64,000 nt of DNA from Macrostomum lignano (Eukaryota). Below, piece by piece: positions 36,927 to 64,000 of the stretch. The notes under the pieces are model-generated. The model was given only the letters and a program-made list of their open reading frames with translations, was not told the DNA's origin and made no database searches. Position 1 is the stretch's first letter. Every line of letters starts with the position of its first letter. The stretch lies in contig NIVC01000177.1 of assembly GCA_002269645.1 (NCBI GenBank), forward strand, positions 128,887 through 192,886, read 5' to 3'. Made by a program: the position numbers and the translations under genes.

Positions 36927-40593
<3,667 letters not shown>

Positions 40594-43853: not shown

Positions 43854-44611
43854 GCCTCTAATAAAAAAATCTTCTGAAGTCTAAACAGCTGGTTTCTTCC
43901 AGTCTCCGCTCCCGCTGCAGGCTAGGCTTTCCCGTCTCCCATTCCACCTCCATCAGCCTGTGTAGCAATTTCTGCTCCCCTCCATCTTTGCTCTCACAGC
44001 GAGCTTTTCTCTCCCCCCCACCCCCTAGCCAAAACCTTTTGTCTTCGTGTAAGCTTTGTCCCCATCCCTTGCTGCGCTCGACTGATTGCGAGAAACTGTT
44101 CACAGCTGAGAGGCTCTTGTATAGTGGCAGCAGAAGCGCGCGTGTTGCATAAACACACTTAACACATGCTCTGAGAGCATAGGAGAGGCGGAATAGCACA
44201 GGCGGTCTCGTTGGATAATTTGTAACCCGCCTCCAGATGCAGCTGAGCCAGAAATGCCGCTTCACGTCACTCTGCGCTTTGTCCATCCCGCGGGCAAAGC
44301 AAACACAAGCGATTGGTTGGTCCGCACTAATGAAAACTGGAAAGATGAAGGCAGAAAAAAGATGTTGCTCTAGAAGCCAAATGCTATAGTTTCAACCCGA
44401 GCCGAAACGTAGGCTAAATAGTCTGCCAGGTGAATTTCTGGACCGATTCTACCTCTGCCCGGCCATTGCAGCATGCAGCTGCATTGCATACATTGCCAGT
44501 GTGAAAAATTAACCTTGCCAATTGCAATTGCCATCCAAGTATTGAAAGTTTTGAGTTGATTATTTTCCTGTAGCTTGTATTGCAGACACAGATTTGCAAC
44601 TAAATAATTGG

Positions 44612-45120
44612 TAGACAGGTAGGTAGATAGGTAGGTAGGTAGGTAGGTAGATAGGTAGGTTGGTAGATTGGTAGGTAGGTAGATAGGTAGGTAGTAGGTA
44701 GGTAGGTAGATAGGTAGGTTGGTAGATAGCTAGGTTGGTAGATAGGTAGATAGGTAGGTAGGTAGATAGATGGGTAGGTTGGTAGATAGGTTGGTTGGTA
44801 GATAGGTAGGCAGGTAGATAGGTAGGCAGGTAGATAGGTAGGTAGGTAGATAGATGGGTAGGTAGGTAGGTAGGTAGGTAGGTAGATAGGTAGGTTGGTA
44901 GATTGGTAGGTTGGTAGATAGCTAGGTTGGTAGATAGGTAGATAGGTAAGGTAGATAGATGGGTAGGTTGGTAGATAGGTTGGTTGGTAGATAGGTTGGC
45001 AGGTAGATAGGTAGGCAGGTAGATAGGTAGATAGGTAGATAGATGGGGGTAGGTAGGTAGATAGGTAGGTTGGTAGATAGGTAGGTAGGTAGATAGGTAG
45101 GCAGGTAGATAGGTAGGCAT
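44612..45120. repeat. Compound (GGTA)n/(GATA)n microsatellite
   Basis: Read directly. Confidence 0.96.
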
Positions 45121-45715
45121 GCTGACACACAGATAAAGCTGACCGCAGAGGGTAGGGCGTTGCCTCTGCTTGTCAATGGCTTCCATCAGAACGATTATCT
45201 CTGGTCGCAAAGGCAGTCCACCTTATCCCCAGTTATCCCTGGCAAACCCTGCCGCTAATCGCGACCCTGCTATCGAACCTCTGATGCAAGCAAGTGCGTT
45301 AAACTGGCGCATTTCCTGCCGGATCCCGCAAATCCAGCGCCTGCACTCAAGCCCCGATTTCCACTGCTACCTCAGAGCTTGGCTGTTGGCGCGCGATTGA
45401 TAAGTCTGGCGGATCAGAGCGGACAGGCAATTGCTGGATTTGCGCTTTTACAACTCCGATGCATTAACGGATTCTTGCTAGGCATGGCTGCCCGCACCCA
45501 GAATCAAAGGTTCATAAAAAATCCTCAAATCGTTAAGATAGAAGATAGAATTCAGGTGACTGCTTTGTCATTATTATCTGAATTTTTATTTCGATTTACA
45601 TCATACTACTAGAAGTATCACACTGCAGCGTTTCTTCTTTTTTAGTTATCAGTAAAACTGGCCAACTAGTTTATTAACAAACTGCAAAATTACATAATTA
45701 CAAATAGCGATTTGT

Positions 45716-46401: not shown

Positions 46402-47796
46402 ATGAACGACAGTTGCGCTGGCATTCTGAGCCGGCACAGCAGCAGTCTCAGCCTCAGCCTGGCATTCGTGCCCTACAGTGTGCACCTCGCCCGCACTCTG
46501 CTGCCGCTTTGGCTGGTGCTTGGCGTTCCAGGCAGCCTCCTCAGCCTGGCCGTCTGGAGCAGTCGCCAGATGCGCAGCAGCTCCAGCATCTACCTGTGCG
46601 CCTTGGCCGTACTGGATGCGGCATTCCTGTTGATGCAGCAGCTGCCCTGGCATCTGCGCGAGTACTATGACGTCAGAGTGCTCGACAACCGGCCCGTCTG
46701 CTGGGCCTTCCCTGTCTACAGCATCTGGATGCAGTACCTGTCCCCAGCCCTGATTCTCGGCTTCACTGTTGAGCGCTACATTGGCATCTGCCATCCGTTC
46801 AGCAGCCACCGGCTCTGCACCGTCCGCCGGGCTCTGGCGGCCACCGGCTGCCTGTCTGTCGGCTGCCTGCTGGTGGCGCTGATGCAGCTCCGCTTCTATC
46901 ACTACGACGCTAGCGTTCAGATCTGCACAGAGGACAAACGGATTCTGGAGGCTGGCACGATGCAGCACCGGTTCTACAACGTGTGGACGAAGATCACGGA
47001 AGTGCTGTTCTTCGCCGCAGCGCCGCTGACTATCCTGGCCTTCAACCTGCTGGTGCTGGTGCAGGTGAGGCGGTCAGCGGCTAGCGGGGCGGCGGCCACC
47101 GTGTCCGAGCCATCTGCGCCCATGCCAACGTCGGCGGCGCAGCGGCGACAACCAACGGCAGCCACGGTGACGCTGCTGAGTGTCTCCTTCTACCAGATCG
47201 GCGCCATGCTGCCGGTCACCGCCCTGCTGTTTGCCAGCATCAGCCTGGTCAGCACCGACTTGGAGGGCCTCACCTGCAACCTCACCGACGCCCAGGTGCG
47301 CCAGCAAATCGATGACGGCCAGCTGCCCCAGCTGCGCACCTATTTCGCTCACCTGGCCGCTAGTCACATAGTTAACAGCCTGGCCGTCAGTCACAATGCG
47401 CTGAAATTCTTTGTCTACCTGGCCACCGGCGCCCTGTTCCGCAGGAAGCTGGCCAGGCTGCTGTGCACCCGGCGACTCGGGGTCGCCGCGGCTGCCAGCG
47501 TCGGCGGCGGTCAAGACCGAGCCGGCAGAGACGACGCCTTCATCGTCTCGGTGCAGCTGCCGTCCCGACGCACGTCGGAGCAGCGTCGACGTCTGCGTCG
47601 GTCGGTGCGCGGCTTTTCATCTGCAGCGCCGGCCGAAGCCGAGGCCGGTAACAACGCGGTCGATGCTGAGAAGAACGGAGCGTCGGCGCTGTCAAAATCC
47701 GAGGAGAAGCCGCCGCTGCTTCTGCAGCCGCCACCGCATCCGATGCAGACTTCGATCGAGTTGGAGGGCGAGCAACTGCAGCTGTCCTGGGTCTAG
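46402..47796 (+). CDS. Class A neuropeptide-type GPCR (FMRFamide/sex-peptide receptor-like), single exon, 464 aa
   Basis: Seven hydrophobic segments; GVPGSLLSLAVW, IYLCALAVLD, VERYIGICHPF, HNALKFFVYLATGALFRR. Confidence 0.92.
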   Translation: MNDSCAGILSRHSSSLSLSLAFVPYSVHLARTLLPLWLVLGVPGSLLSLAVWSSRQMRSSSSIYLCALAVLDAAFLLMQQLPWHLREYYDVRVLDNRPVCWAFPVYSIWMQYLSPALILGFTVERYIGICHPFSSHRLCTVRRALAATGCLSVGCLLVALMQLRFYHYDASVQICTEDKRILEAGTMQHRFYNVWTKITEVLFFAAAPLTILAFNLLVLVQVRRSAASGAAATVSEPSAPMPTSAAQRRQPTAATVTLLSVSFYQIGAMLPVTALLFASISLVSTDLEGLTCNLTDAQVRQQIDDGQLPQLRTYFAHLAASHIVNSLAVSHNALKFFVYLATGALFRRKLARLLCTRRLGVAAAASVGGGQDRAGRDDAFIVSVQLPSRRTSEQRRRLRRSVRGFSSAAPAEAEAGNNAVDAEKNGASALSKSEEKPPLLLQPPPHPMQTSIELEGEQLQLSWV

Positions 47797-48332
47797 AGGA
47801 GTCTTATCTCGGAGGCCCAGCCGCAGATTCTTGACCCATTCCGCCGGCTCCTTAAGCGGCCTGCCTGTTCACATAGAGGAGGTCACCCCGCACTGTCTAT
47901 AACTTGAGCAAAATCGAAGAGTACGAAAGCTGTTTATAAAACACATTCAAATACATTCAATGTCCACTGCGGCATTAATTGTTTAACTGATGAGATCTGA
48001 CACTAAAACAGATCATGCAAGATTTCATTGGTGTAAGCCTTATATAATTGTTTAGAATTTGCACTTTTGATACGAGTAAATCAGCAGCTACTGCCGTCAA
48101 CACTCAGCTGCTTTGGCAAATAACTTTCAAGTTAGGGTGAAAATAAGATTTTAAGTATTTAGCAGCTTTCGTTTTCTGTCAGAGATAATCTCTACTTTTG
48201 CTTTCCCAACTTAATCCAAAGACTAAGAAAATGCTGTGGTTTTAACTTTTCTCACAATTTCTTGTCTTGGCTAATTCAACTTCTATTTTTTATAAATTCC
48301 TATCTGTCTTAGTAACTGGCCGGGTGACCTAG

Positions 48333-49010
48333 TGTCTGTCCCTTCCTGTCTTAGTGTCTGTCCCTTCCTGTCTTAGTGTTTGTCCCTTCCTGTCTTAGTG
48401 TCTGTCCCTTCCTGTCTTAGTGTCTGTCCCTTCCTGTCTTAGTGTCTGTCCCTTCCTGTCTTAGTGTCTGTCCCTTCCTGTCTTAGTGTCTGTCCCTTCC
48501 TGTCTTAGTGTCTGTCCCTTCCTGTCTTAGTGTCTGTCCCTTCCTGTCTTAGTGTCTGTCCCTTCCTGTCTTAGTGTCTGTCCCTTCCTGTCTTAGTGTC
48601 TGTCCCTTCCTGTCTTAGTGTCTGTCCCTTCCTGTCTTAGTGTCTGTCCCTTCCTGTCTTAGTGTCTGTCCCTTCCTGTCTTAGTGTCTGTCCCTTCCTG
48701 TCTTAGTGTCTGTCCCTTCCTGTCTTAGTGTTTGTTCCTTCCTGTCTTAGTGTCTGTCCCTTCCTGTCTTAGTGTCTGTCCCTTCCTGTCTTAGTGTCTG
48801 TCCCTTCCTGTCTTAGTGTCTGTCCCTTCCTGTCTTAGTGTCTGTCCCTTCCTGTCTTAGTGTCTGTCCCTTCCTGTCTTAGTGTCTGTCCCTTCCTGTC
48901 TTAGTGTCTGTCCCTTCCTGTCTTAGTGTCTGTCCCTTCCTGTCTTAGTGTCTGTCCCTTCCTGTCTTAGTGTCTGTCCCTTCCTGTCTTAGTGTCTGTC
49001 CCTTCCTATC
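48333..49010. repeat. 22-bp satellite TGTCCCTTCCTGTCTTAGTGTC, ~30 copies
   Basis: Read directly; very homogeneous. Confidence 0.98.
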
Positions 49011-51182
49011 TTGCGCCAAAATCCGACAGCTACCCATGACAGCCCATGAGAGTCCGGGCATCCCCAGCCCCAATCCAATCTAATCCTGTCGGTAAAATTG
49101 AAAAGCCCCTAACCTTCCGCCTCTAAAATAATCTTCCGGCTGATTCGAAGCCGGCGCTGACGCATCAGAAGCCACCTGACAGGCCAGTGACGGACGGCCG
49201 CGCGCTGCCAGGGCGGACAGGCTAACACGCCGCACAGAATAGGGGAAGGCTAATCAGTCATTCGCCGACAGCGGGGAATCTGTTGCCAGCTCATCTCTTT
49301 CGCTCTGTTTCTTTCTTTTCCCATCTTGACTTCAGAGGCCACTTCGCGTAGCGGCAAAAGGCCCGGCCAGCAGCAAGTCAGGCACCAGAAAGTACTTTCT
49401 ATATAGGTTCAGTATAGGCCGCGGGTCAGCCAGCCGTGACCACCAATAACTCACGGAGCCCCCCGCCTGCTGGCGCATTCGAATGGCGAATGGCGTACGC
49501 ACGTATGCTGGCGCATTATAGCAAGCAACTGCATATGCCAACTGGGGCGCTAGCCGGCTTCCCTTGAGCCTTGGGCATCGACTTTGCTTGATTGATTTTC
49601 ATTTTCTTCTTCTCTTTCTCTAGTTGTAATTAACTAATAATAATATTATTATTACTAATATCATTATTAACTTTGAAAACAGCGTGATTCACCCATCATA
49701 GGCTAGGCTGGCCATGTAAAAATTAATTCTAACAGGCTAAGCATTACTACTAGCGTATATGGCCTTTCATAAATAAACATTAGCAAATGTCTGTCAGTAC
49801 GGTTGCTTATTTACGAAGCCTTTAGCGGTTAAGCGGTTTAGCGGTCAGTCGTGTGGAAAAATGCCTAGCATTATAATGTATACTTCAGCCTGCGGGCAGA
49901 AACTGCATGCATGCCAAACTGGTTGGGGAAATTGTTCTGCTAATTGGAGAATTCGATGGATTTTGGCAATGAAATCAGGTTCTGATTTAAAATAAAATGA
50001 GCATTTACGGTAAAGTAAAGTACATATTCGTCTGCGTATAGATAAGTTGAGCTAAAGTAATAAAGGGAAAATGTAATTTTCACATTCATTTAGATGATTT
50101 ACCAGTAAAAGTTAAAAAAATAATTATAAGGTTTGTTTTAATCTTCAAAAATTATTTTCCAGGAAACAAAATACCCGTCCATCTACTTTCCTCAGGGGTC
50201 CCTGCCGGGCTTACTGTTATGAAAGCAGTTTGAAGTATAGCTCGTAAAAATCAATAATGTAAAAGACTTCCGAATTTCAAACAACCCTTATAATATTTTA
50301 ATGTTCAAAAGCCCATGGTTTCTTTAAGCTAAGTACCGGTATGCAAAGCATTGCATTTCAAAACAACTGTTTAAAGCTTTGGTTTAGAATTGATCAGATC
50401 ATTTCTAAGACAGTCGAGTGTAGCGGCCCTTTACTGCGGTTGTCCATGTGTATTCCCGTCCAGCTTCCAGGTGGTCCTTGAATCGACTACTATGAGTAGC
50501 TAACTATCAAGATAGCTATTGCTCAATTGATAGCGCAGGTAAAGTCAATCATCTTCTTATCTCAGCAGTCTTTATCCATAAATTTCTCTCTTTCCAAGCA
50601 AATCGTTTCTTAGAAATCTCCATCTCTCTTTGACTTGAAGAAGCCGCAGAATTTATCGCACAAAGAAGCCCTAGAAATCCCGCCCATCAGATGATGACCA
50701 GTGACAACGAAAATGGCCCACTATGGATTAGTCAGTAATAAAAGATTAACCAGTTGCACAGAATACCAGAAAGAAAATGAGCCAGTATCTAGTCAATAAC
50801 TCATGATAGAGATAAAGAGTTAATTGGAAAAGGCTATAGCAAAAGAGAAAGTGCTGCGCAAGCCTCCTCAGGTCTCCTCTACGCAAGCAATTGCTCATTC
50901 TTGCCTTATCCTGCCTGTCTATGCCAGTTAGCTGCAGGAAATTTATTTGCTCTGTCCCTGTCTTGGCGTTGGACAGTTGCAGTGGGCGGGAATATTTATT
51001 AGCAGCAATACAGGCCTCAACAATGGCCGAGCAGATGCCAAAGCTAGTGAGCTGGCTTGATTTATTACGCAAAGAAAATAAGAGTACCATGCATGCTATC
51101 CAGCATAGCTCTCGTTTCCTGATGCAATCACTGTTGCGACTGTTAGAAGAGTTCGGTTGTGCTCTGCTTGCTGAGATTGAGG

Positions 51183-52522
51183 GGTAGCGGAGGGTAACTA
51201 TCTGAAGGATATTGGGACTGAAGGACGGAGGGTAGCTACCTGAAGGACACTGGGTAGCGGAGGGTAGCTATCTGAAGGACACTGGGTAGCGGAGGGTAGC
51301 TATCTGAAGGATATTGGGTAGCGGAGGGTAGCTATCCGAAGGACATTGGGTAGCGGAGGGTAGCTATCTGGAGGACACTGGATAGCGGAGGGTAGCTATC
51401 CGAAGGACATTGGGTAGCGGAGGGTAGCTATCCGAAGGACATTGGGTAGCGGAGGGTAGCTATCCGAAGGACACTGGGTAGCGGAGGGTAGCTATCTGAA
51501 GGACATTGGGTAGCGGAGGGTAGCTATCTGGAGGACACTGGATAGCGGAGGGTAGCTATCTGAAGGACACTGGGTAGCGGAGGGTAGCTATCTGGAGGAA
51601 ATGGGTAGCGGAGGGTAGCTATCTGAAGGACATTGGGTAGCGGAGGGTAGCTATCCGAAGGACATTGGGTAGCGGAGGGTAGCTATCTGAAGGACATTGG
51701 GTAGCGGAGGGTAGCTATCTGAAGGACACTGGGTAGCGGAGGGTAGCTATCTGAAGGACACTGGGTAGCGGAGGGTAGCTATCCGAAGGACATTGGGTAG
51801 CGGAGGGTAGCTATCCGAAGGACATTGGGTAGCGGAGGGTAGCTATCCGAAGGACATTGGGTAGCGGAGGGTAGCTATCTGAAGGACACTGGGTAGCGGA
51901 GGGTAGCTATCTGAAGGACATTGGGTAGCGGAGGGTAGCTATCTGAAGGACATTGGGTAGCGGAGGGTAGCTATCTGAAGGACACTGGGTAGCGGAGGGT
52001 AGCTATCTGAAGGATATTGGGACTGAAGGACGGAGGGTAGCTACCTGAAGGACACTGGGTAGCGGAGGGTAGCTATCTGAAGGACACTGGGTAGCGGAGG
52101 GTAGCTATCTGAAGGACATTGGGTAGCGGAGGGTAGCTATCCGAAGGACACTGGGTAGCGGAGGGTAGCTATCCGAAGGACACTGGGTAGCGGAGGGTAG
52201 CTATCCGAAGGACATTGGGTAGCGGAGGGTAGCTACCTGAAGGACATTGGGTAGCGGAGGGTAGCTATCCGAAGGACATTGGGTAGCGGAGGGTAGCTAT
52301 CCGAAGGACATTGGGTAGCGGAGGGTAGCTATCCGAAGGACACTGGGTAGCGGAGGGTAGCTATCCGAAGGACATTGGGTAGCGGAGGGTAGCTATCCGA
52401 AGGACACTGGGTAGCGGAGGGTAGCTATCCGAAGGACACTGGGTAGCGGAGGGTAGCTATCCGAAGGACACTGGGTAGCGGAGGGTAGCTATCCGAAGGA
52501 CATCGGGTAGCGGAGGGTAGCG
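51183..52522. repeat. 32-bp satellite GGGTAGCGGAGGGTAGCTATCTGAAGGACACT, ~41 copies
   Basis: Period 32 (51241 to 51273); the irregular block ATTGGGACTGAAGGACGG recurs at 51211 and 52016. Confidence 0.98.
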
Positions 52523-53284
52523 GAGAGTCACTGAAGGACTTTGGGCAGTGGAGTGTCACTGATTTTCACGATCAAATTAAAGTTGAGAGCCATATCGGAC
52601 ACTTCATCCTAAGCAAGCAGGCATGTATTGCAGGCAGAAATTTAAACAAATTGTACTTGTGACTGAGTATTCTGATTGTGTCCAGCACTCCTCCTGTAAT
52701 GTCACGATGTCACGGTCGCCTAGTTTTGCGACAAACATGTCATGTCTCTATGACTTCGTGTCTCCTGTCAGAGTGCAGAGTGAAGTTACCGCCAGACACC
52801 CAACGGTAGCCACCTGCTAGCCGCTGTAGTTTTCGTGTCAGATTTTATCGAGTCCAATCTTACACAGAGGCCTATAGACGCTACTGCCAGGCCAGTAAAA
52901 GCTAATGAATATTAATGGATAGGAGAGACGCGAGCTCCAAGCTGCTTTCGGTTGGCACGCGATCGAGCGTTTCTTGAAATTGCTTGTGCAAGAAGAAAGA
53001 TAAGAAATAGGGAAATTCGAATAGAATGAACCAGAGGGATGGGGAGAGTGAATGGACTGCGAGAGGATGATCGGAAATGTCCGCTCGAAGCATGGAGAGA
53101 ACGGAGGCCACTGCGTATTTGATTTTATCTAGAAGAACTCTGATATTTAATATTTACATGCTATTGAACACCAAGTGCGCTGATCCAAAAGTTCATAAAA
53201 TCTATTTTAAGCAGAGTCGATATCCTTTCAAAGGTGATAATTAATGTTCTCATTGCTAATGTGTACTGCGTGTGTGTGTCATGG

Positions 53285-53323
53285 GTCTGTCTGTCGGTCT
53301 GTCTGTCTGTCTGTCTGTCTTAG

Positions 53324-53376
<53 letters not shown>

Positions 53377-53379
53377 TAG

Positions 53380-53472
<93 letters not shown>

Positions 53473-53513
53473 GCCTGCCTGTCTGTCTGTCTATCTGTCT
53501 GTCTGTCTGTCTA

Positions 53514-53570
<57 letters not shown>
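53285..53570. repeat. (TCTG)n microsatellite with TCTTAGTG variants
   Basis: Read directly. Confidence 0.98.
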
Positions 53571-53819
53571 GTAAAACGCTGGTAATAATTATTCAATAAT
53601 GATTAGCCAACGCAGCAACTCCTGTCTTCATTTACTTTTCAAGCCGCAAACAGGTGAAACGAATCAGAAGCTCGAATGTAAGCTTCAGCGCACAGTGAGT
53701 GCCGCTCCTGTTCTGACAGAGCAGCTTTGGCAATCTGCAATTCAAATTCTGCTGACCAGACTGCGTGCAACACTCGACTATATGAGGCCAGCGAGCCCCA
53801 GGCAAGCCGGCTGACAGCC

Positions 53820-55410
53820 ATGCACAGCCCGGACAGCACGGAGGAGATCGGCCTCAGCCCCGTTGGCGAGGCTTCCAACCAGCGCCCGGGCGTCATCGGC
53901 CAGGTCGACAGCAAAGTCGCGCACTGCGACGCGTGCACGACGGCCCGAGGCTGACGCCGCTGCCGGCGCTGCTGGCTGGCCCGGCTGGCGGCCTGGCCGG
54001 CCTCCTGCTGGGCGTCAGCCTGCGGATTCTCTGCGCAGACGTCGCCGCTGGCGGCCTGCTGGCCTGGGCGCTCGGCTGGCCCGGCCGGGCCTGGGCGGAC
54101 CTCCTCCGCTGCGCTGTGCTGCCGCAGGCCACGGTTGCCGCTGCCGCTGCGCTGCTCGAATTAAGTCTTGGCAGCGTCGCGGCGCTGGTCTTAGTAACGG
54201 TTGCTATGCAGATGGCAGCCTGGATTCTGGCCACCGGGGCATTATGTCGCTGATGCTGTGGCTTCGGCCTGGACAGCTGAGAGTCGAGGACAGCAGCGGC
54301 GGAGGCGGCGGCGAGTTCACCTCAGGTGACACCCTGGCCGCCGCGGCCGCTATTCTGGACGTCCTGGGCGGTCTGCTGTTCCCCGACAGCTTGGCTGCGG
54401 CTGCCATGAGCAAGCGGCCCCTGAGGCTGCACGCTTGGCAGCTCCGCTGGGCCAATGCCAGCAATGCAACCAGCAGCGCCGATCCGGCTGACTTTGCCGT
54501 GTTCGCCCCGCCCGGTCCGAACTTGCTGGGCCTGCTGGCCGTCACAGGGACAGCCGTAGCCCTGCTGAAGCATCGCGACGTCCACGGCGACCTATTCGAA
54601 ACGGTAAGAGCTCTGCGGAGTGCCGTCGCGCGCGCCCACCACTGCCTGCGCCACCTGGCGCCGTTTGGCTTTGCCAGCCTGGCCGCCCAGGCCGCGCTGG
54701 AGGCGCCGCCGCCGCCGCCGCTGGCCGACGTTGGAGCCAGCGTGCCCGGCCTGGCGCTGTGCCTCGGCCTGCTGGCGGCCTGGCTGCTGCTGCTGGGACT
54801 CGCACTGCCTCTGCCGCCGCTGCTTGCCGCTTCCGGCGGGCGGCCCAGCCCCGTCCGCTGCCTGGCCGAGGCGCTGCCCGCTGCCGGAGTCGCCTTCGCC
54901 ACGGGGTCCGGCGCTGCAGCGATCGGCGCCAGTCGGCGCTGTTGTCGCGCCCTCGGCGCCTCGTCAGCCATCGGCGGCGCGGATTTTCTGCTGCCGTTGG
55001 CCGCTTCGCTGAGCGCCGGCGCCGGCGCCTCCAGGCTGGCCGGCTGCGCCATCTTCCTGGGCCAGCGCAGCCTGGCGGCCAAGCTCGGCGCTGACGTGCA
55101 CCGGCTCCTGGCGATCGCTGCAGTGGCCACGGCCTGCGCACTGGTCTCGGCCGGCTCTTCGTCTCCTGCGCCGGCCGGCCTGGCCGACCTTCGTCTCGTC
55201 CTGCTGGCCGGGGCAATTCGAGCCGACGAGCTGCACCTGCTGGCGCCGACCGAGAGGTTCGCGGCCCGGTGCTCGGCGGCGGTCGGCGCCCTGATCGACA
55301 TCGCCTGCTGCTGCGTTTCCGACCGGCTGCACAGGCGGTGGTCGAAGGCGGCTGACGGCGATATAGGAGAGGCAGAGGCGGAAGCCGACGTAGCAGAGGC
55401 TGAAGCTTAA
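53820..55410 (+). CDS. Highly divergent SLC1/EAAT (dicarboxylate/amino acid:cation symporter) fold protein; two single-base frame breaks
   Basis: Three consecutive frames: MHSPDSTEE... (53820), GLLLGVSLR...GWPGRAWADLLRCAVLP (TM1-3), then LWLRPG, LDVLGGLLFPDSL, GPNLLGLL, LAPFG, AFATGS, FLLPLAASL, AIFLGQ and the TM8 equivalent. Breaks near 53930-53954 and at GGGG 54236-54239. Confidence 0.8.
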
Positions 55411-55899
55411 AACTTTGACTGACTAACTCAGCCCCAAAGTCCAGGTTCATCGTGTATTAAATGGGCACGCAATCGGCATCAGAGGAAATAGCCAGCGAAA
55501 CTTTGACAGCAGAAATGACTGAATTTGCTTATTGCAGCCTGCGGCTAGGTGCCCTTTGGCTAACAGCTGGCACTGCATTGCAAAGTGGCACAAATGTTTA
55601 CATTGCGTTCTACTGACTAGAATCAGTCTTTGACTGCTGCTACAAACCTCTTGATTTGGCTTGGTAAAAGAAGCAATTTCGTGATCGCATCATTCATTGT
55701 GTGTAAAATAAAATTTTAGCTCAAGAATCTAGTTATTCAACTCCGAGCTCGTATAGATAATACAATTTTAATTAACCTGTGGAATGATTAAAGAGAGCTC
55801 CTACTGACAAGTAGGCAGGAACGAATCATATTGGATAGTGGGATGCGAATACTGTTGCACACTGACAGATCAATAGTAGTGCGAAACCACTCGGAGTGT

Positions 55900-56290
55900 G
55901 TATGGAAGAGCTGGGCACATGTTTAACCTCCATTATATTTATCGGACATTGGGTTATTGAATTTGAACAGCAAGCTCTTTAGGACTTGCTTACTGCATCA
56001 CCCAGGGACTCGGGACAGGAAACGGCCGAGTCATGCAAAAAAGTTTACGACTAAACTCACCTGAAATGTAGTACACAGCGGCATTCTCATGCGATGTGTC
56101 CCAATGTCCCAAAGTGTCCCAATTTCATCAACTTGATATTTTACTAGTAACGCTGCACTGAGCAACACCTGCTCAACTGAAATAAAGTGATTTCCGTCAC
56201 CCATTTGACGGTACACACCGAATTTGCCTTCCAAATTATCTGTGTGGAATTCAGAGAGCAGTACATACTTCATAGAAATACGTACGAGTA
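55900..56290 (-). mobile_element. Decayed P-element/THAP9/Galileo-type transposase fragment
   Basis: KYVLLSEFHTDNLEGKFGVYRQMGDGNHFISVEQVL resembles the catalytic-Glu motif (Y-L-x-x-x-F-x-Q/T-D-x-L-E-x-x-F-G-x-x-R-Q-x-x-G-x-N); a downstream YNGG before a stop resembles the xRGGL motif. Confidence 0.65.
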
Positions 56291-56632
56291 CTGGTCTACT
56301 TTCTAAAGCATACTTTCTAAAAATAAATGTGCCAAAGTAAATGGTATATATTCCCCATTTATACCAGTGCTAAGGCAATATTTTTTTGCCATAGACACTT
56401 GTATAAATGGGAAATATTTGATGTATCCATCAGTTGCCATTTATTTGCGCTCAGTTCCATCACACACTGGAATAGTGCGTCACACACTGAAGCGACATAA
56501 ACGGAAGCTTCCAAGCAAGCGAGTGGCTAAAAGAAAAGTCAGAAGTTCATGCATGCGATCTAAGAGCTACACTGAACACTGCATACCGGAGCCACGCAAA
56601 CGGTTTTCTACTAAGTGGATTTCATCATTAAA

Positions 56633-57794
56633 ATGCCTCGGTTGCTGATTGGATGCACTGCTCAGCGGATTTTAGGGTATTTCCTGTTAGCAGCGTTCAG
56701 TACAATAACTGCGAAGCTGTATTTTGATTACTTGAACGCACAGGTAAAGAAAAGTTTGCCATGGGAATCGGCTAGCGATAATAAACGTCCCATAACGCAC
56801 CAAGGCTTCAGTGGGAAAAGCACGGAGAGCACCACTCAGCCCGCTGAGCTGCCCCAGCTGCCTTCCTCTGAGTTCTACATTCGAATGTTGAGCGCAAGGT
56901 CGCCGCCTCGAGGTGATCTGTTCGATCCGCAGATCAATGCGACTGAACTGCGAGCAACTGTCAAGCTGCTGTGGGCGTTTTTGGACCTGTGCAAACAGCA
57001 CAACATCCAGGTGATGCTGTACGGAGGTACACTGTTAGGCTCGTACCGGCATCATGGCGTCATTCCATGGGATGACGATCTGGACATGCTGATGAGGGAG
57101 GCCGACAAGCGCAGACTTATTGAAGCTCTGAAGGGGTGAGTCTATCGACATTGCGTGCAACTATAGGCGTTCCTGTCATAGACGGTTGGTTAGTCAAGTC
57201 CTCGCACCCTTAGTAGACGTTCCTAAAAATGGTAGTCAAAAAAGACAAAACATCAACATCAACAGGCACCCGGACCTTCGCCTAAGGCAAGCTGGTCGGT
57301 GGAAAGTGTCCAGCAAGTCACATTGTCTTAACGTGGCCAGACACGGCTGCTGGCCCTTCATTGACCTGTCATTCCACGAGCTGGAGGGTGGCTGGGTTAA
57401 TGACTTGCACGACTCTTTTGGGAAGAAGTGCCGCTACCCAGAAAAGGTGACCTTCCCGCTGCATAAGAGGCCGTTCATGGGCCGCTGGGTCGACTCACCC
57501 AGAGATGCGCTCAACTTTCTATCCTACTCGTACGAGCCTTCAAACGCATGCATCAGCCTGCACTATTCCCACAAGTTTGAGCGCTATCCAAACGTTACAT
57601 CGGTGTCAATCGACTGCAAGGAACTCGCTCTGACCTACCCGTTTGTGTATCGCGTCCCGGACTCTGCTACCTCTCGTGGTGGCGTCTTGGAGACGCTGGT
57701 ATTTTCTGACGGCGGACCGGTGTACACTGTGCCAGTTAATGAGCCAAACGGTGTGATCAACGCTATTTACAGCACTCTGTTGGTGAAGAATTGA
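56633..57794 (+). CDS. LicD/fukutin-family nucleotidyltransferase-fold protein, type II membrane, 2 exons (~343 aa)
   Basis: Exons 56633-57135 and 57266-57794 (phase 2); N-terminal [21 protein letters not shown]; [23 protein letters not shown]; WPFIDL; FPLHKRPF. Confidence 0.9.
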
Positions 57795-58902
57795 GGCAAG
57801 AAGGCAGAGAGCGATACTACGAGTTACCGATTAAGTAGCTTTGGAATGAACAAGGAAGATAAACTATAACAATAGGTCTGGGATAAAAACAATATGCTGA
57901 AGCTTAGCGATTCGTTTGCATTTATTGTATCATTTTGAGGGGCATTTTGGTTTTTAGATGTAAAGTAAATCCAATAGTTGCAAGCATATCCAATATCCTA
58001 TCGTGCCGATGACGAGGTCAATAAACGTGGCACGAAAGCATTTTTTGCTATAACACTTGCATAAAGGGGGAATACTTCTTTTTCTGTTCAATTTCAACAA
58101 CACTCGCATTCAGTTTCGGCAAGCTGACATTCAATTTTATCACTCTACGCTAGTATATTTAGCTACTTCAACCGTCATTCAATTTCGGCAAGTGGCATTC
58201 AATTTCGTCAATTGGATATTCTATTTCATACCATAGTGAGGGCGTTACTTCTGTCTATGGACAAAGCTTGTTCCTGAATGCAGATTTCCCATTCAATTTC
58301 GGCATGCTGCATTCAATTTCAGCACTACATTTTCGGTGCGCTTTTTTAGCGTACTGTATTAATCTTAAACAGCCCACTCTTAAACTGATAACAAAAGCAC
58401 TGCTCTCCAAAATCGGAGTGGCCTGTACTAAATCTAAAACTAGCGTCCACGCAGCTGCATGGCCGCCTCTCTGTCGTAGTCATACTTTTCTCACCGATAG
58501 AGCCAATCATTGTAGACAGCGCGTGTGCGTGTTTTTTCGGATGTACTTTTCCACAGCGCTTGCCGAGTTGCCGATTTCCCGAGTTGACACTGAAGACCAA
58601 CTCAGCTCGGTTGTCATGGTGACTCTTAGATTTTTTGCCTATGTTAACAACCAAGGCAAAAGTGAATGACGACATTTAAAAAACGCACTGAAGAAACGGT
58701 CAAGCGTAAGGAATGCATGCAAGAAAAACTGAACCATTTTTTCCATTTTTTGCGTAAAAACCTTTACAAAAACGAGTACTTGCTACTGACAAGTAGTAGT
58801 CTAAAACTGGACGGCCACTCTCCCCTTTACAAGTCACAGATTTTCTGCCTTGCGCTCCTGATCCGTAATGTATTTCGTTTGGCTAAAATCACGAGCTGCT
58901 TG

Positions 58903-61187
58903 CTAATGCGCTGCTGCTTTGTCGCCGCTGATTGACAAAGGCGGTACTGAAGCGCCTGACGCCACGGGCCGGTCATCGGACAAGTCGAGCGGCTCCGGCA
59001 GCTCCCAGGCTAAGCCGAAGTCGTCATCGCTCTTTCGTTGGCCCTGCTCGCCCTCGCCGTCGCGGCAGGCAATGACGCCAAGCCGCGGCACGGGCACTGC
59101 GGCCGAGTGAAGCACGGCGAGGCAGCGCCCGCTGGCTGAATGGATTAGGCGGCGCTTCAGAGGCTCGTAGCACCAACTTTGCAGCCTCGCCAGACTACCC
59201 TCACCGTTGTCAGTGTCCTGACACGGCGCCAGCGACAGCTGTTGGTTGTTGTAGTGCAGACAACTACCATCGGATCGCGCCAGAACCAGTGGCCTGCCGC
59301 CTCTATCAGCGGAGGTGGCGGAGGCTGCTGCCGCTTCCGCGATCACCCAAGTCTGGCCGCCGCCTTCGCCGTGGCATTCCCGAATCATAGGCGTCGCCGC
59401 CTTCTCTTCCGTGTCGAGGGTGGAGAACACGGCGTCGAGGCACCAGATGCGGCCCGAGAGTGTCGTAGCTACGCGCAGTTGCCCCATGCGAACGGCGGTG
59501 GCGTTATCGGCCTCCAGACGCCACCACCGCGCCGCCAGCTGTTCCGGGCAGACGGTGTCCAGGTACCAGCGGAACGAGCGGCAGCCAAGCCTTCGTCGGA
59601 GCTGCCGCCTCTGCGAGACGTCGCCGAAGTCACCCAGCCGATAGTTGAACTGGCGATACAGGATATGCTTGAAGCCGTCCAGCCACACTTCCGCCAGTCG
59701 GATGGCATTCCGCTTTAACACCTCGGCGGCGCCGCTTTTGCCCCAGGTGTAGGGGCTGACGGAGCGAAACAGGTGGCCGACGATCGAGCAGGGCACAATC
59801 TCGATTCGGCCTTGATCGCCGCACATCCACACGCGGAAGCTGAGCTCGAGATTCTCGCTGCCCCAGATCTCCATCCCTGGGTCATAGCCGCCGAGCTCAG
59901 CAAAGAAGGCCCGGTCTATGGTGAAGAGGCCGCCTGGCATAGTGGCGCTCGGCACTGGATCGGCGCGGCCTGTGAGGTTCCGCCGTACCCGGTCTGGCAC
60001 CGGGCGCCAGGCGAACGCCAGACCCGGCCAGTCGAAACCGCCTACCGTCATTCGCTCCGGGGCCACGTGCAGGAAGGCCAGAGACTCGCTGCTGACCACG
60101 TCGATGTAGGGCACGGCCACCGTTCGTCGGCTGCGGGCCACTCGGTCCAGCAGGGGCTCCAGCCAGCCTTCGGCGCATTCGACGTGCGAGTCCAGGAAAG
60201 TGAGCGTCTGGCCAGTTGCGGCCGCGGCGCCAACCAAGCGGGACCTGAAAGATTCAGAGTTTGGGATTCCTACTGTGCGGTAGTTGAAATTGAAAATGCT
60301 CGTCATGACAAAGCGGTGTCAGATTGCTATCTAAGACCCAGAGTTGACCTTATAGTGCCTGCCTGTGTACTGGTAAATGAGAACCTGTACAGCTTGTCAC
60401 CTCTCACCTGACCAGCCCTTCGCGGCGGGAATTCCGTATTAATCTAAGCCGAGCGCTCGTACCGGACCGGCCCAGCTCAGCCAGGTAATCCTCCAGAGGC
60501 CGGCCGAGCTGCGGTCGAGTTGACGCGTCGTCCACCAGGATGACCTCGTGCAGCAGGTTCGGAGGCGACCTGTCCAGCACGGAGTGCAGCGTCCTGAGCA
60601 GCGCCGACCAGGCCTCGTTGTGCGCGCAGACGATGACGCTGGTGTTGGCAGGCCGGCCGCTGTCCAGTTATTCTTGCGGCAGGCCAGCGGCCGAAAGTCT
60701 TGCAGGCGACGTCGCGGTCCAATTCGATCGCTGGCAAACTCGTTGAAGCCGCTGTCGCGCCAGCCAGCCTCGAATCGGTCGCGCTCGTCGGCGTTCAGCA
60801 GGCTCGGGTCGACCCACACCGGGGCACCAAGGTCGCCGGGACCGCCGGCCGCTGATGTCGGCGCACCGGTTGATGGCGCCGTCAAGCTTGTCTTCATGGC
60901 GGACGTTGCCGTCGAGCTGGTCGCTTCTTCCATCATGAGGATGCTGCGCAGCCGGTCCTGACGCTCGCGCAGTCGCTGCAGCCGCTTCCCCGGTCGCTGC
61001 GCCTAAACTCGGCGCTCAGGCGGGATTTTTCAGCCAGCACTCGGTCGCTGGAGTCGGTGTCATCGTTGAGGCCGTGATCTGCGTGGATACTGAGCAGCGC
61101 AGCTACCAGGGTCAGCCACAGAAGCGAGGTGACCAGAAGCAGAAGACGAAACAGCGGGTAACGCCGCCAGAACAGCCAAACTCGCAT
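58903..61187 (-). CDS. GALNT: Polypeptide N-acetylgalactosaminyltransferase (GT27 plus ricin-B lectin); at least two single-base frame breaks in exon 1
   Basis: Exon 1 61187-60408, exon 2 60244-58903. [20 protein letters not shown]; FNEFASDRI; [23 protein letters not shown]; EVILVDDAS; REGLVR|SRLVGA; FLDSHVE; [16 protein letters not shown]; [10 protein letters not shown]. Breaks at CCCC 60988-60991 and GG 60647-60648. Confidence 0.92.
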
Positions 61188-62649
61188 AATCAAACTTATT
61201 TTTGCTTTCTAATGCTGCTCTGGCGGAAGACTGGGGGCTCAGTTCCACTCGCTATAGTTGAAGAGGAAGCTCCAGTTATTAAAGGCTTCGAGTGGCCTAT
61301 GCGCTAAGTTGGCTAATCTCCATCCAATTGGCCGAACAACCAAAATCACTTCTTCAACCGGCTTTCCTACGAGAGGTCGGAGAGCATTGGAAACGGATTG
61401 TGAGCCATTGGTTTTCGACTATTGCCCAGCCAAGGAGAAGAGAGCTCAGCAGCTAACTCTCTAAACCCTGTTGCTACCCTCCAGAGCGGCTGTCCAGCCG
61501 AAAGATTGAGCAGAAATCCGTTTCCTAGCTGCGCTGCGCAGACAGCCTGCTTCCTGCGGACTATTTGCTGATGTGCTGGGTGAGTGGTAGGCAGTTGGGG
61601 GCTGGGGGGTCCAGATCCAATCCCTACCTTTGCAGGCGCCGTATTTGTCTACTCCTAGCTGACAGTGCGAGCTCATTGGTGCCAGCAAACCCTCGATTTT
61701 TATTTAAAAAGTGCGTGCACCTTAGCTACTCACCCGAGAATGCATAGTTGCCAGCGAGTCGCTCAGAGCAGGGAAGGCAGTCAGCCGAAGCAAATTGGGA
61801 TATTCTTTCCGACCTCTTTGGGGAATATCCTCCCCAATGCTGAGGCGCCTCTGCGTGAGCACAGCTGAGCAATTCCGGACTAACTGCTTTCAAGCCGCCT
61901 GGCTCAACTGCGATCAAGAAATCAGCCCGAAGGCTCCTAATTAGAAATCAATCAAGTTTCTCGTCCACCCCGGTAGCGCACAAACTGCATGCCCCGCTGC
62001 CGCAGGGGACTCCCGATAGACTTAGCCGAATCGCCTTCAGTCCGAGGCTCTGAATAAAGCTTTGCCGCCTTTCCCCCTCGGGTCCGGATTCTGATCCCTC
62101 TGGTGGATAAGCTCTTCTTCATCCTAAACTTGTGGGGGTTCTAAACTGGACTAGCTAGTGCTCAAGAATTCCCTTACAGCTTAGTAGGCTTGTACATCAT
62201 ATTCTGTCCCATTGTACAGCAGCCGAATGGGTTTGAAATAATGTACGCTCGTACTTGCATTTATTTAATACAAGCTGCTTATTGAGTGCCAACTTCATTG
62301 AAACACCTCATTTTTTATTGCTCCGTGGCGCAAACCCTGAATATTGACAAGAACCAAGACTGAGCACCCAAAAACCAAAGCTTGTTATTAATTCTACTAG
62401 ACTACTCTAAGTCGTGTAACTAAGTATCTTTAAGCAAATAAAAATTGGAAATTCTATAAAAATACGTCTGACTCGCCTATCAAGGTGGCCAGATGTCCCG
62501 GCGCATCAGAGGACTCGGAGAGGAGCAGGCGTCCTTCAGTCTTGTGAAATTATTTACTTCGGTCCGATGAAGCGTACCGCTGTCGAGACTGTGGGGAGGG
62601 CAAAGCTATGGCGCAATAAAACTGCAATTGAACCTATGGCCGGGCCCTA

Positions 62650-63165
62650 ATGGGGAATAAATAGGTTTCTGTAGTCTATGGCCGGACCCAAGCATGGAAT
62701 AAATAGGTTTCTGTAGTCTATGGCCGGACCCAAGCATGGAATAAATAGGTTTCTGTAGTTATGGCCGGACCCAAGCATGGAATAAATAGGTTTCTGTAGT
62801 CTATGGCCGGACCCAAGCATGGAATAAATAGGTTTCTGTAGTCTATGGCCGGACCCAAGCATGGAATAAATAGGTTTCTGTAGTCTATGGCCGGACCCAA
62901 GCATGGAATAAATAGGTTTCTGTAGTTTATGGCCGGACCCAAGCATGGAATAAATAGGTTTCTGTAGTCTATGGCCGGACCCAAGCATGGAATAAATAGG
63001 TTTCTGTAGTCTATGGCCGGACCCAAGCATGGAATAAATAGGTTTCTGTAGTCTATGGCCGCGACCCAAGCATGGAATAAATAGGTTTCTGTAGTCTATG
63101 GCCGGACCCAAGTGGAGGAATAAATAGGTTTCTGTAGTCTATTGTCCGGGCCAAGTGGGGAATAA
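62650..63165. repeat. 42-bp minisatellite TATGGCCGGACCCAAGCATGGAATAAATAGGTTTCTGTAGTC, ~12 copies
   Basis: Read directly. Confidence 0.97.
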
Positions 63166-63904
63166 ATATCTTTTATCTGCTTGTCAATCAATCACTATAA
63201 TGATAATACAAGACCTCTAAAATCAAGACATGCCGTTTAGCACTAATGACAGATATTAAAATAGTTTGTTATAAACTACTTTGACGTCCACATTTCATGC
63301 ACAAGAGTATAATAACGTGTATTAGATGGACATATACTATAGGCGTATAAATGACCCAAAAATCATTTGAAGTGAAAAGTTTACTTTATACCCGCAAGAA
63401 AAAAGCGCAGCATCCTACTAACTTGAAATTTGTTGGTTGATTTCTACTTTTGTGGAGAGATTTAGAAAAGCAATTTAGAGCTATTCGGCAAGTATTGCAG
63501 CAGGTGCGGGGCAATTGCTACCAATTCTATCATTCCCTGCACTGGCGGTCTAGCAACTACTTTAATCCCAATGAACTATTGAGCTGAAAATCCTGTCTGT
63601 CAGCTACCGGGCCAGATCTCAAGCAGCGGTAGTCTTCCTTCACCCCCTTACCCTCCAGATCGCTGATCGCCTTGGGGGGAAATCGATAATATATCGATCA
63701 GCGCCAACTGCTCGCTAGCATGGGGAATGGGGATTGGGGCGTTTCTCTGTCCCTCTCTCTCTCTCGCTCCCGCCCGCTCCCTGCCGCAAATGCTTAGAAA
63801 CTACAATAGGGGAGGGAGAGATCAAGAAAGATTTTGGCAGAGTCGAAAGCAATAGAATTGAAAGCCAATTTTTGAAGCCAGCAGGACCTGAGCAAGCAGA
63901 GACG

Positions 63905-64000
63905 ATGCCGCAGTCACCCACATCGCCTGAGTCGCCCAGGACCGGCACCGGATCCAAGCAGAGCATCCCGTTTGCCAGCCCGCTGAGGGCCAACATTCTG
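63905..64000 (+). CDS. Probable start of a gene running off the window (MPQSPTSPESPRTGTGSKQSIPFASPLRANIL...)
   Basis: ATG in a GACGATGC context, 32 open codons with coding-like usage; no product can be assigned. Confidence 0.45.
   Translation, partial: MPQSPTSPESPRTGTGSKQSIPFASPLRANIL

What the first reader, a model, noticed from the sequence alone, without database searches (positions are those of the whole stretch)
53820..55410. SLC1/EAAT pseudo-transporter: fold kept, substrate and sodium sites erased
By-eye alignment with GltPh numbering: the HP1 serine motif becomes TGSGAA; NMDGT (310-314) becomes SAGAG; TM8 D390-x3-D394-R-x-R397-T398-x2-N401-x3-D405 becomes E-RFA-A-R-C-S-A-AV-G-ALI-D. 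So D394, R397, T398, N401 and N310/D312/T314 are lost and only D405 remains. Scaffold motifs persist, and the last frame stays open for ~390 GC3-rich codons, which argues for selection. Established: SLC1 trimers also carry an uncoupled anion conductance. Inference: a non-transporting channel, a regulatory subunit, or a carrier for a quite different solute.
Basis: partly seen in the sequence, partly recalled or inferred. Interest (0 to 1): 0.75.

Follow-up and report, generated by a model that had tools for sequence, protein, structure and literature searches.

The report
Divergent flatworm SLC1 transporter-like gene
The flatworm Macrostomum lignano has a real, unannotated gene for a glutamate-transporter-family membrane protein that appears to keep the family's fold but has lost nearly every residue known to bind sodium or amino acid; it could be a repurposed protein or a decaying duplicate, and the data here cannot yet tell which.

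Summary
Window 53820-55410 encodes an SLC1/SDF-family protein (Pfam PF00375, E=4e-17 over the whole domain once the frame is right). HMMER and MAFFT both align HP1 SSS to GSG, NMDGT to SAGAG, and TM8 D-x3-D-R-x-R-T-x2-N to E-x3-A-R-x-S-A-x2-G.

The window is Macrostomum lignano, assembly Mlig_3_7. Its two frame breaks are one-base contractions of a CCC run and a GGGG run. A second subgenome copy (L001) has neither and carries one uninterrupted 530-codon ORF. A third copy (L003) has only the second contraction. A neighbouring gene has the same kind of lesion, so assembly error is likely but not proven.

No protein among 1.84 billion cluster representatives exceeds 32% identity, and the gene is not annotated.

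Evidence for past or present selection:
- An intact ORF despite extreme divergence.
- Third-codon-position composition typical of this genome's genes.
- Hydrophobic positions kept.
- Two N-glycosylation sequons among only four Asn.

Evidence for decay:
- Ala/Gly/Arg/Pro-skewed composition.
- All four differences between copies change the amino acid.
- No orthologue and no expression data.

Verdict: a new, strongly degenerate variant of a known family. It cannot be a canonical Na+-coupled amino-acid carrier. Its function is unproven.

The parts
53820..53887 (+). Start codon and cytoplasmic N-terminus (MHSPDSTEEIGLSPVGEASNQR, then a truncated Pro codon). Read in frame 0.
   Evidence: The translation is continuous with the intact ORF of L001. 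The GC island begins about 53800.
53885..53887 (+). Frame break 1. A CCC run here is CCCC in copies L001 and L003.
   Evidence: Four-way alignment of the copies.
53888..54238 (+). Rest of the N-terminus and TM1-TM3, read in frame 2.
   Evidence: It aligns to TM1-3 of SLC1 homologues. Codon-position GC fits this frame. It is part of the Pfam match in the intact copy.
54236..54239 (+). Frame break 2. A GGGG run here and in L003 is GGGGG in L001.
   Evidence: With the extra G, the spacing from the start of TM3 to the R-P-G motif equals that in EAAT1.
54241..55410 (+). TM3 end to C-terminus and stop codon, read in frame 1 (about 390 codons).
   Evidence: Pfam SDF match, PDB EAAT1 match, and tblastn of the conceptual protein.
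54454..54474 (+). NASNATS, two N-x-S/T sequons in the metazoan-type TM4b-4c extracellular insertion.
   Evidence: These are two of only four Asn in the protein.
54514..54534 (+). GPNLLGL, the conserved G-x-N-x-LG scaffold motif at the start of TM4c.
   Evidence: Alignment. Coordinates.
54892..54927 (+). HP1 loop AFATGSGAAAIG, in place of the canonical A(F/L)GTSSSSATLP.
55012..55026 (+). TM7 SAGAG, in place of NMDGT (Na1/Na3/substrate ligands).
   Evidence: Of the 58 nearest homologues, 48 keep N[MLT][DN][GA]T.
55126..55182 (+). HP2 region ATACALVSAGSSSPAPAGL, with a 3-residue insertion at the hairpin tip.
55252..55299 (+). TM8 ERFAARCSAAVGALID, in place of DWLLDRFRTxxNVxGD. Only the EAAT1 R477 and D487 equivalents are retained.
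   Evidence: The role of R477 comes from PMC4924932.

Best explanation
This is a genuine single-exon gene of the flatworm Macrostomum lignano. It encodes a 530-residue, very divergent member of the SLC1/SDF (glutamate transporter) family and is present once in each of the three subgenomes.

Shown:
- One copy (L001) is fully intact.
- The two frame breaks in the window copy are one-base homopolymer contractions.
- The protein is collinear with the whole SDF domain.
- It keeps the animal-type glycosylated loop and is predicted to adopt the EAAT fold.
- Every side chain that binds the amino-acid substrate and the three Na+ ions in canonical members is replaced by Ala, Gly or Ser.

Inferred:
- Most of its divergence accumulated while the reading frame and the membrane-protein character were under selection. 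It is therefore, or was until very recently, a working protein and not a long-dead pseudogene.
- Because the coupling and substrate sites are gone, it cannot act as a Na+-coupled amino-acid carrier.
- The most likely mode of action is an uncoupled one. It could be a constitutive or differently gated leak/anion pathway at the interface between the transport and scaffold domains. Or it could be a facilitator for a different, possibly anionic, solute bound by the new Arg residues (R406, R480, R484).
- Whether it works alone or as a partner in trimers with canonical EAATs is open.
For: Identity:
- Pfam SDF 62.6 bits over profile 10-386/387.
- PDB EAAT1 E=3.5e-8.
- Foldseek top hits are EAAT3, ASCT2 and EAAT1, with TM-score 0.75-0.86 normalised to the target.

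Organism and locus:
- The neighbouring ORF is about 99.5% identical to an M. lignano UniRef protein.
- Window 46633-64000 is 100% identical to GCA_002269645.1 contig NIVC01000177.1.

Intactness:
- L001 has ATG 7232 to stop 8824, 530 codons, with no stop or frameshift.

Frame breaks as homopolymer artefacts or lesions:
- Between the window and L001 there are five single-base indels. In all five the window lacks a base in a homopolymer.
- Two of the five lie in ppGalNAcT, where the annotated protein P0065 supports the longer run.

Selection on the frame:
- No protein among 1.84e9 representatives exceeds 32% identity, yet the ORF is open and collinear end to end.
- Between the window and L001 in this region, indels arise at roughly 1 per 7 substitutions. 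Neutral divergence of this depth would therefore have wrecked the frame many times over.

Coding signature:
- Third-position base composition (A .07, C .44, G .37, T .12) equals that of the neighbouring GPCR gene.
- T at codon position 2 is 0.27, as in the neighbouring membrane-protein genes.
- The GC island ends exactly at the start and stop codons.

Other points:
- Only 4 Asn remain in 530 residues. Two are N-x-S/T sequons in the extracellular TM4 loop and one is the conserved GxNxLG Asn.
- The CDS is much less variable between copies than its immediate flanks: 4 of 1591 against 15 of 993 sites, p=5e-4.
- The arginine that sets anion selectivity (EAAT1 R477) is retained.
Against: - There is no evidence of expression. 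The gene is in no annotated proteome.
- No orthologue or closer paralogue is known.
- All four substitutions between copies are nonsynonymous, with none synonymous.
- Composition is strongly skewed to Ala/Gly/Arg/Pro (46%), with almost no Asn, Lys or Tyr. GC-biased erosion under relaxed constraint would produce this.
- Only 31 of 61 family-conserved columns are kept, against 64-95% in ordinary members.
- Two of the three copies carry frame breaks, which could be real.
- Low CDS divergence against the flanks is also seen for the neighbouring genes and could reflect regional effects.
- The AlphaFold model is only of moderate confidence (pLDDT 63). It was driven by a homologue alignment, so it is not independent proof of foldability.
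Confidence: 0.55

Rival explanations
1. It is a decaying duplicate or young pseudogene. A lineage-specific SLC1 copy lost its function. Under relaxed constraint, the genome's GC-biased substitution in genic DNA converted polar residues to Ala, Gly, Arg and Pro. Individual subgenome copies are now picking up frameshifts. The open frame persists because GC-rich sequence rarely generates stop codons and the loss is recent.
For: - Total loss of the functional motifs.
- Amino-acid composition skewed to Ala/Gly/Arg/Pro, with GC1 0.76 and GC2 0.60 against 0.55-0.66 and 0.42-0.53 in neighbouring genes.
- 4 nonsynonymous and 0 synonymous differences between copies.
- Frame breaks in two of the three copies.
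- The antisense frame is open as well.
- The gene is unannotated and has no relatives.
- Triplicated subgenomes give redundancy (PMC10733133).
Against: - One copy is fully intact.
- Divergence to 32% identity or less without a single real frame-breaking indel is hard to reconcile with long neutral drift.
- Third-position composition still equals that of active genes and is far from the 45% GC non-coding background.
- Hydrophobic codon-position-2 T is retained.
- Sequons and the scaffold Asn and Phe residues survive against the GC drive.
- The frame breaks look like the assembly's homopolymer under-calls, because the neighbouring conserved gene shows the same thing.
Confidence: 0.33
2. It is an ordinary Na+-coupled EAAT/ASCT-type transporter, and the motifs only look lost because of misalignment or sequence errors.
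For: The assembly does carry indel errors or lesions in this region.
Against: - HMMER and MAFFT give the same register, with conserved flanking landmarks: F-x-LP before TM7, AIF-x-x-Q after it, P-x-AGL in HP2, and the final D of TM8.
- The three genomic copies are identical at all motif positions.
- No NMDG-like or D-x3-D-R-x-R-T string exists in any frame of the locus.
Confidence: 0.02
3. It is a bacterial contaminant or a recent horizontal transfer of a high-GC bacterial SDF gene.
For: The gene is 72% GC in a 45% GC neighbourhood with sharp boundaries, it is intronless, and some bacterial proteins are among the weak hits.
Against: - It sits between flatworm genes in three syntenic subgenome copies.
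- GC3 of 0.8 is normal for this genome's genes.
- It has the metazoan TM4b-4c insertion with N-glycosylation sequons, which is absent from the shorter, bacterial-type homologues in the alignment.
- The best hits are animal proteins.
- NCBIfam, whose models cover prokaryotic families, gives no hit.
Confidence: 0.01

Closest known systems
Animal SLC1A transporters (EAAT1-5, ASCT1-2)
   Same: - Full-length SDF domain and a comparable length (530 aa).
- The TM4b-4c extracellular insertion with N-glycosylation sequons.
- The G-x-N-x-LG, F-x-LP, AIF-x-x-Q and P-x-AGL landmarks.
- The TM8 Arg at the EAAT1 R477 position and the last TM8 Asp.
- The predicted structure superposes on EAAT1, EAAT3 and ASCT2.
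   Different: - About 19-25% global identity.
- The HP1 serines, NMDGT, and TM8 D476/R479/T480/N483 are all replaced by Ala, Gly or Ser.
- The TM3 Thr/Ser are probably lost too.
- Composition is extremely Ala/Leu/Gly-rich, with no Tyr.
- There is a 3-residue insertion in HP2.
Archaeal GltPh/GltTk aspartate transporters
   Same: Same fold family.
   Different: The protein lacks the equivalents of N310, D312, T314, D394, R397, T398 and N401. It has the eukaryotic TM4 insertion. The Arg sits in TM8 (EAAT type), not in HP1.
Reconstructed ancestral uncoupled aspartate transporter (PDB 9BGY, 9BGZ, 9BH0; PMC12668577)
   Same: It shows that an SLC1 fold can bind and move substrate without Na+ coupling. 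It is among the structural and sequence matches.
   Different: That protein still binds aspartate. Here the substrate ligands are missing as well as the ion sites.
Partly degenerate invertebrate SLC1 paralogues: Plakobranchus ocellatus GFO22672.1 (P0001) and Oedothorax gibbosus KAG8195426.1 (P0009)
   Same: - They are the best or near-best hits.
- They also carry altered HP1, NMDGT and TM8 motifs (TLHGD, HMNGG, E-W-L at the start of TM8).
- They also keep a low share of the family-conserved columns, 46% and 66%.
   Different: - Only 21-25% identical to this protein, with no shown common origin.
- They retain the TM8 R-x-R-T and Asn, so most of TM8 is intact.
- They are not GC- or Ala-skewed.

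Membership tests
SLC1 / Pfam SDF (PF00375) sequence family | Match to the family HMM above the curated gathering score across the domain | tested here: met
   62.6 bits against a cut-off of 27.9, residues 59-503 on profile 10-386/387. The window ORF alone gives 50.6 bits.
SLC1 / Pfam SDF (PF00375) sequence family | Eight-TM plus two re-entrant hairpin (elevator) fold | tested here: met
   The AlphaFold2 model has pLDDT 63 and pTM 0.62. Foldseek against the PDB gives EAAT3, ASCT2 and EAAT1 at E about 1e-12 to 1e-9, with TM-score 0.75-0.86 normalised to the target. This is a prediction guided by a homologue alignment, not a solved structure.
Metazoan SLC1A subfamily | Long TM4b-4c extracellular insertion bearing N-glycosylation sequons | tested here: met
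   A roughly 40-residue insertion relative to the shorter, bacterial-type homologues, containing NAS and NAT.
Na+-coupled amino-acid transporters of SLC1 (EAAT/ASCT/GltPh type) | Serine-rich HP1 tip (S-S-S) contacting the substrate | tested here: not met
   TSSSSATLP aligns to TGSGAAAIG.
Na+-coupled amino-acid transporters of SLC1 (EAAT/ASCT/GltPh type) | NMDGT motif in TM7 (Na1/Na3 and substrate ligands) | tested here: not met
   SAGAG sits at the aligned position, identically in all three genomic copies. Of the nearest homologues, 48 of 58 keep the motif.
Na+-coupled amino-acid transporters of SLC1 (EAAT/ASCT/GltPh type) | TM8 D-x3-D-R-x-R-T-x2-N-x3-D (substrate amino and carboxyl ligands, Na1) | tested here: not met
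   E-x3-A-R-x-S-A-x2-G-x3-D. Only the R477 and D487 (GltPh D405) equivalents are kept.
Na+-coupled amino-acid transporters of SLC1 (EAAT/ASCT/GltPh type) | TM3 Thr/Ser ligands of Na3 | tested here: inconclusive
   MAFFT puts A134 at a conserved TM3 Thr column. A by-eye register against EAAT1 puts M-Q-M opposite T-T-T. TM3 is weakly aligned, so the register is uncertain.
Na+-coupled amino-acid transporters of SLC1 (EAAT/ASCT/GltPh type) | Measured Na+-dependent substrate uptake, substrate-gated anion current, and trimer formation | not testable with these tools
   This needs heterologous expression and electrophysiology or biochemistry.
Pseudogene | Frame-disrupting lesions in all genomic copies | tested here: not met
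   L001 has an uninterrupted 530-codon ORF. The window has two one-base homopolymer contractions and L003 has one.
Pseudogene | Neutral substitution pattern (dN/dS about 1) | tested here: inconclusive
   Only 4 differences between copies, all nonsynonymous (pN 0.0036, pS 0). The probability of that under neutrality is about 0.26.
Pseudogene | No transcription or translation | not testable with these tools
   No read data were reachable. Absence from annotations is uninformative, because the clearly real ppGalNAcT gene is also missing from the GenBank gene list of these contigs.

The most novel reading that the evidence does not exclude
This is a naturally evolved SLC1-fold protein that has given up ion-coupled substrate transport altogether. 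It has been kept in all three M. lignano subgenomes as an ungated or differently gated anion or leak channel, or as a silent subunit that modulates canonical EAATs in heterotrimers. That would be the first 'dead-transporter' member of the glutamate transporter family.
Probability: 0.15. Interest if true: 0.8.

Novelty: new variant of a known kind. Interest (0 to 1): 0.45.

Why it matters
SLC1 proteins are both carriers and anion channels. How the uncoupled conductance relates to the ion and substrate sites is still studied mostly with mutants. A natural protein that keeps the elevator fold and the selectivity arginine, but none of the Na+ or substrate ligands, would be a ready-made separation-of-function variant. 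It would also be the first candidate pseudo-transporter in this family.

M. lignano is a laboratory model with RNAi and transgenesis, so the question can be tested.

If the gene turns out to be decaying, it is still useful. It shows how GC-biased substitution reshapes a membrane protein in a neopolyploid genome. It also warns that homopolymer contractions in Mlig_3_7 split real genes.

Tried and rejected
- Word-indexed search of 5.8e9 proteins with the conceptual protein found no hit. The candidate list was probably swamped by Ala-rich words.
- Exact look-ups of the window ORFs and of the intact L001 protein found nothing on record.
- dN/dS between the subgenome copies is underpowered, with only 4 changes.
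- I looked for an older, more diverged copy next to the paralogous LicD genes (L004, L005). Those segments share LicD and ppGalNAcT at 86-89% identity but have no SLC1-like gene, and homology stops about 70 nt after the SLC1 stop codon. They give no outgroup and cannot separate insertion from deletion.
- NCBIfam gave no hit.
- The antisense ORFs of 365 and 302 aa have no Pfam family, so the antisense strand shows no sign of coding.
- A literature search for divergent SLC1 members lacking NMDGT found no paper.
- Small introns as the cause of the frame changes were rejected. Introns of about 48 nt do exist here, for example in LicD. But the TM3 spacing leaves no room for one, and L001 differs by exactly one base at each site.
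- The split 'scaffold kept, polar residues erased' is only a trend. The protein keeps 25 of 43 apolar and 6 of 18 polar family-conserved columns (no significance test was run).

Full report
**What is there**

Window 53800-55410 is a 72% GC island in flanks of about 45% GC. Its edges coincide with an ATG at 53820 and a TAA at 55408-55410. The longest ORF (53863-55410, 515 aa) matches Pfam SDF/PF00375 at 50.6 bits against a cut-off of 27.9. It also matches crystallised EAAT1 at E=3.5e-8 with negligible composition bias. The N-terminal third of the protein lies in two other frames. tblastn of a conceptual join recovers three abutting pieces in frames 0, 2 and 1, and each piece shows the coding pattern of codon-position GC in its own frame. 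No other SLC1-like sequence is in the window. The antisense ORFs have no family match.

**Whose genome it is**

A neighbouring ORF is about 99.5% identical to a Macrostomum lignano polypeptide GalNAc-transferase in UniRef. Window 46633-64000 is 100% identical to contig NIVC01000177.1 of GenBank assembly GCA_002269645.1, Mlig_3_7. That assembly was built with Canu from PacBio reads and polished with Pilon (PMC5730564). The other genes in the window are ordinary animal genes: a DEG/ENaC channel, a rhodopsin-type GPCR, a LicD/fukutin-like gene and a PX-domain protein.

**The frame breaks**

Using the LicD neighbour as a handle, I fetched two further copies of the locus from the same assembly. L001 is on NIVC01003800.1 and L003 is on NIVC01001111.1. 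Three copies fit the three subgenomes reported for this neopolyploid (PMC10733133).

Over the gene and its near flanks the copies are about 99% identical. They compare as follows.

| Copy | Run at 53885-53887 | Run at 54236-54239 | Reading frame |
|---|---|---|---|
| Window (= L002) | CCC | GGGG | broken twice |
| L003 | CCCC | GGGG | broken once |
| L001 | CCCC | GGGGG | one uninterrupted ORF of 530 codons, ATG 7232 to stop 8824 |

The intact protein matches the SDF profile from position 10 to 386 of 387, at 62.6 bits and E=4.4e-17.

The same kind of lesion occurs in the neighbouring GalNAc-transferase gene. There the window copy alone lacks one base in a CCC/GGG run and one in a CCCCC/GGGGG run. 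Both L001/L003 and the annotated protein P0065 support the longer runs. All five single-base indels between the window and L001 are homopolymer contractions in the window.

I read these as probable uncorrected long-read consensus errors in GC-rich, triplicated DNA. I cannot exclude real, copy-specific frameshifts sheltered by redundancy. Either way, an intact copy of the gene exists in this genome.

**The motifs**

HMMER against EAAT1 and MAFFT against eleven homologues give the same register. Conserved landmarks on both sides anchor it: G-x-N-x-LG, F-x-LP, AIF-x-x-Q, P-x-AGL and the final TM8 Asp.

- HP1: TSSSSATLP aligns to TGSGAAAIG.
- TM7: NMDGT aligns to SAGAG.
- TM8: D472-x3-D476-R477-x-R479-T480-x2-N483-x3-D487 aligns to E-x3-A-R-x-S-A-x2-G-x3-D.

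The three copies are identical at these positions.

Among the 58 nearest homologues, 48 keep N[MLT][DN][GA]T and 51 keep the TM8 pattern. None is erased to this degree. A sea-slug paralogue and a spider paralogue are partly degenerate.

The one polar TM8 residue kept besides the last Asp is the arginine at the EAAT1 R477 position. That residue sets the anion selectivity of the uncoupled conductance (PMC4924932).

**Fold**

An AlphaFold2 model built on a 12-sequence alignment has pLDDT 63 and pTM 0.62. It superposes on EAAT3, ASCT2 and EAAT1 in outward-facing states with TM-score 0.75-0.86 normalised to the target. Because the model was guided by homologues, this shows compatibility with the fold, not stability.

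**How isolated it is**

A full HMMER scan of 1.84 billion cluster representatives found only 58 hits at E<1e-3. The best was 4.9e-10, and none exceeded 32% identity. The locus's own product is not in the collection. No gene is called there on any of the three contigs, but that is uninformative because the GalNAc-transferase gene is not called either. In the global alignment the protein is 19-25% identical to the others, which share 31% on average.

**Alive or dead?**

*For selection, past or present*

1. Between the window and L001, indels in this region arise at roughly one per seven substitutions. A sequence that drifted neutrally to 32% identity or less would have lost its frame many times. 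Here the frame is intact and collinear with the whole domain.
2. Third-position base composition (A .07, C .44, G .37, T .12) is the same as in the neighbouring GPCR gene and far from the non-coding background. The island stops exactly at the start and stop codons.
3. T at codon position 2, which marks hydrophobic residues, is 0.27, as in the neighbouring membrane-protein genes. A at position 2, which marks polar residues, falls to 0.13.
4. Only four Asn remain in 530 residues. Two form NAS/NAT sequons in the extracellular TM4 loop, and one is the conserved scaffold Asn.
5. Three conserved Phe residues survive against the GC drive.
6. The CDS is less variable between copies than its flanks: 4 of 1591 sites against 15 of 993, p=5e-4. 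The neighbouring genes show the same contrast.

*For decay*

1. Ala, Gly, Arg and Pro make up 46% of residues. Tyr is absent and Lys is 0.8%.
2. GC1 and GC2 are well above those of neighbouring genes, while GC3 is merely normal for this genome.
3. Only 31 of 61 family-conserved columns are kept.
4. All four differences between copies are nonsynonymous.
5. There is no orthologue and no expression evidence.

The antisense frame is open for 389 codons, and shuffles give such runs in 0.4-2.8% of trials.

**Verdict**

The locus is a real, probably intact gene for a strongly degenerate SLC1-family protein. It cannot work as a canonical Na+-coupled amino-acid transporter.

- I put about 0.55 on it being, or very recently having been, a selected protein with an uncoupled function, either channel-like or a carrier for a different solute.
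- I put about 0.33 on it being a decaying lineage-specific duplicate.
- Misalignment and bacterial origin are essentially excluded. The metazoan loop, the synteny in three subgenomes and the animal best hits all argue against them.

It is a new variant of a known family. Its interest is moderate until expression and conservation across Macrostomum species are checked.

Noticed in passing
window 60640-60650 and 60985-60992 (minus-strand ppGalNAcT gene, 58906-61190 plus upstream exons to about 63999): The window copy of a conserved polypeptide GalNAc-transferase gene has two one-base homopolymer contractions that break its frame. Copies L001 and L003 and the annotated protein A0A1I8I2Z2 (P0065) read straight through. 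This points to residual long-read indel errors, or copy-specific lesions, in Mlig_3_7.
   Followed up: yes
window about 53570 (end of the (GTCT)n microsatellite at 53285-53570): Identity between the subgenome copies jumps here. It is 95-97% with many indels upstream of the microsatellite and about 99% downstream, which suggests a recombination or gene-conversion boundary at the repeat.
   Followed up: partly
L004 9298-9371 and L005 9143-9216, against window 55480-55553: Older paralogous LicD-ppGalNAcT segments (86-89% identity) lack the SLC1-like gene. Shared sequence begins about 70 nt after the SLC1 stop codon, so the gene sits exactly at a duplication or rearrangement breakpoint. In these paralogues the ppGalNAcT stretch equivalent to window 59153-60428 is also missing.
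   Followed up: partly
window 51182-52521: A 32-nt tandem repeat (consensus CGGAGGGTAGCTATCCGAAGGACACTGGGTAG) has at least 15 copies by TRF and extends further by self-similarity. The copy number appears to differ between subgenome copies.
   Followed up: no
window 16224-17955, 26363-27240, 28677-29355, 36616-37542, 44560-45210: Several long tandem or low-complexity repeat arrays give spurious ORFs of 180-300 aa in several frames. One is a second (CTGT)n-type array like the one upstream of the SLC1-like gene.
   Followed up: no
window 41159-42931 (+) and 46402-47796 (+): Two long single-exon genes: a full-length DEG/ENaC (ASC, PF00858) channel of 590 aa and a rhodopsin-type GPCR of 464 aa. Neither exact product is on record in the protein collection.
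   Followed up: partly
window 55149-55211 (inside the HP2 coding region): TRF reports an imperfect 33-nt direct repeat of 1.9 copies at 80% match. It overlaps the HP2 tip, where the protein has a 3-residue insertion. It may be a small internal duplication or a chance match in GC-rich sequence.
   Followed up: no
window 55707-55712, against L001 about 9121-9126: The only AATAAA within 300 nt downstream of the stop codon is AATAAC in copy L001. An ATTAAA about 45 nt after the stop is shared. The true poly(A) signal is unknown.
   Followed up: no
proteins P0001/P0059 (Plakobranchus ocellatus) and P0009 (Oedothorax gibbosus): Other invertebrates carry annotated SLC1 paralogues with partly lost HP1, NMDGT and TM8 motifs (TLHGD; HMNGG; E-W-L at the start of TM8). 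Whether these form an old divergent clade with the flatworm gene was not tested.
   Followed up: partly
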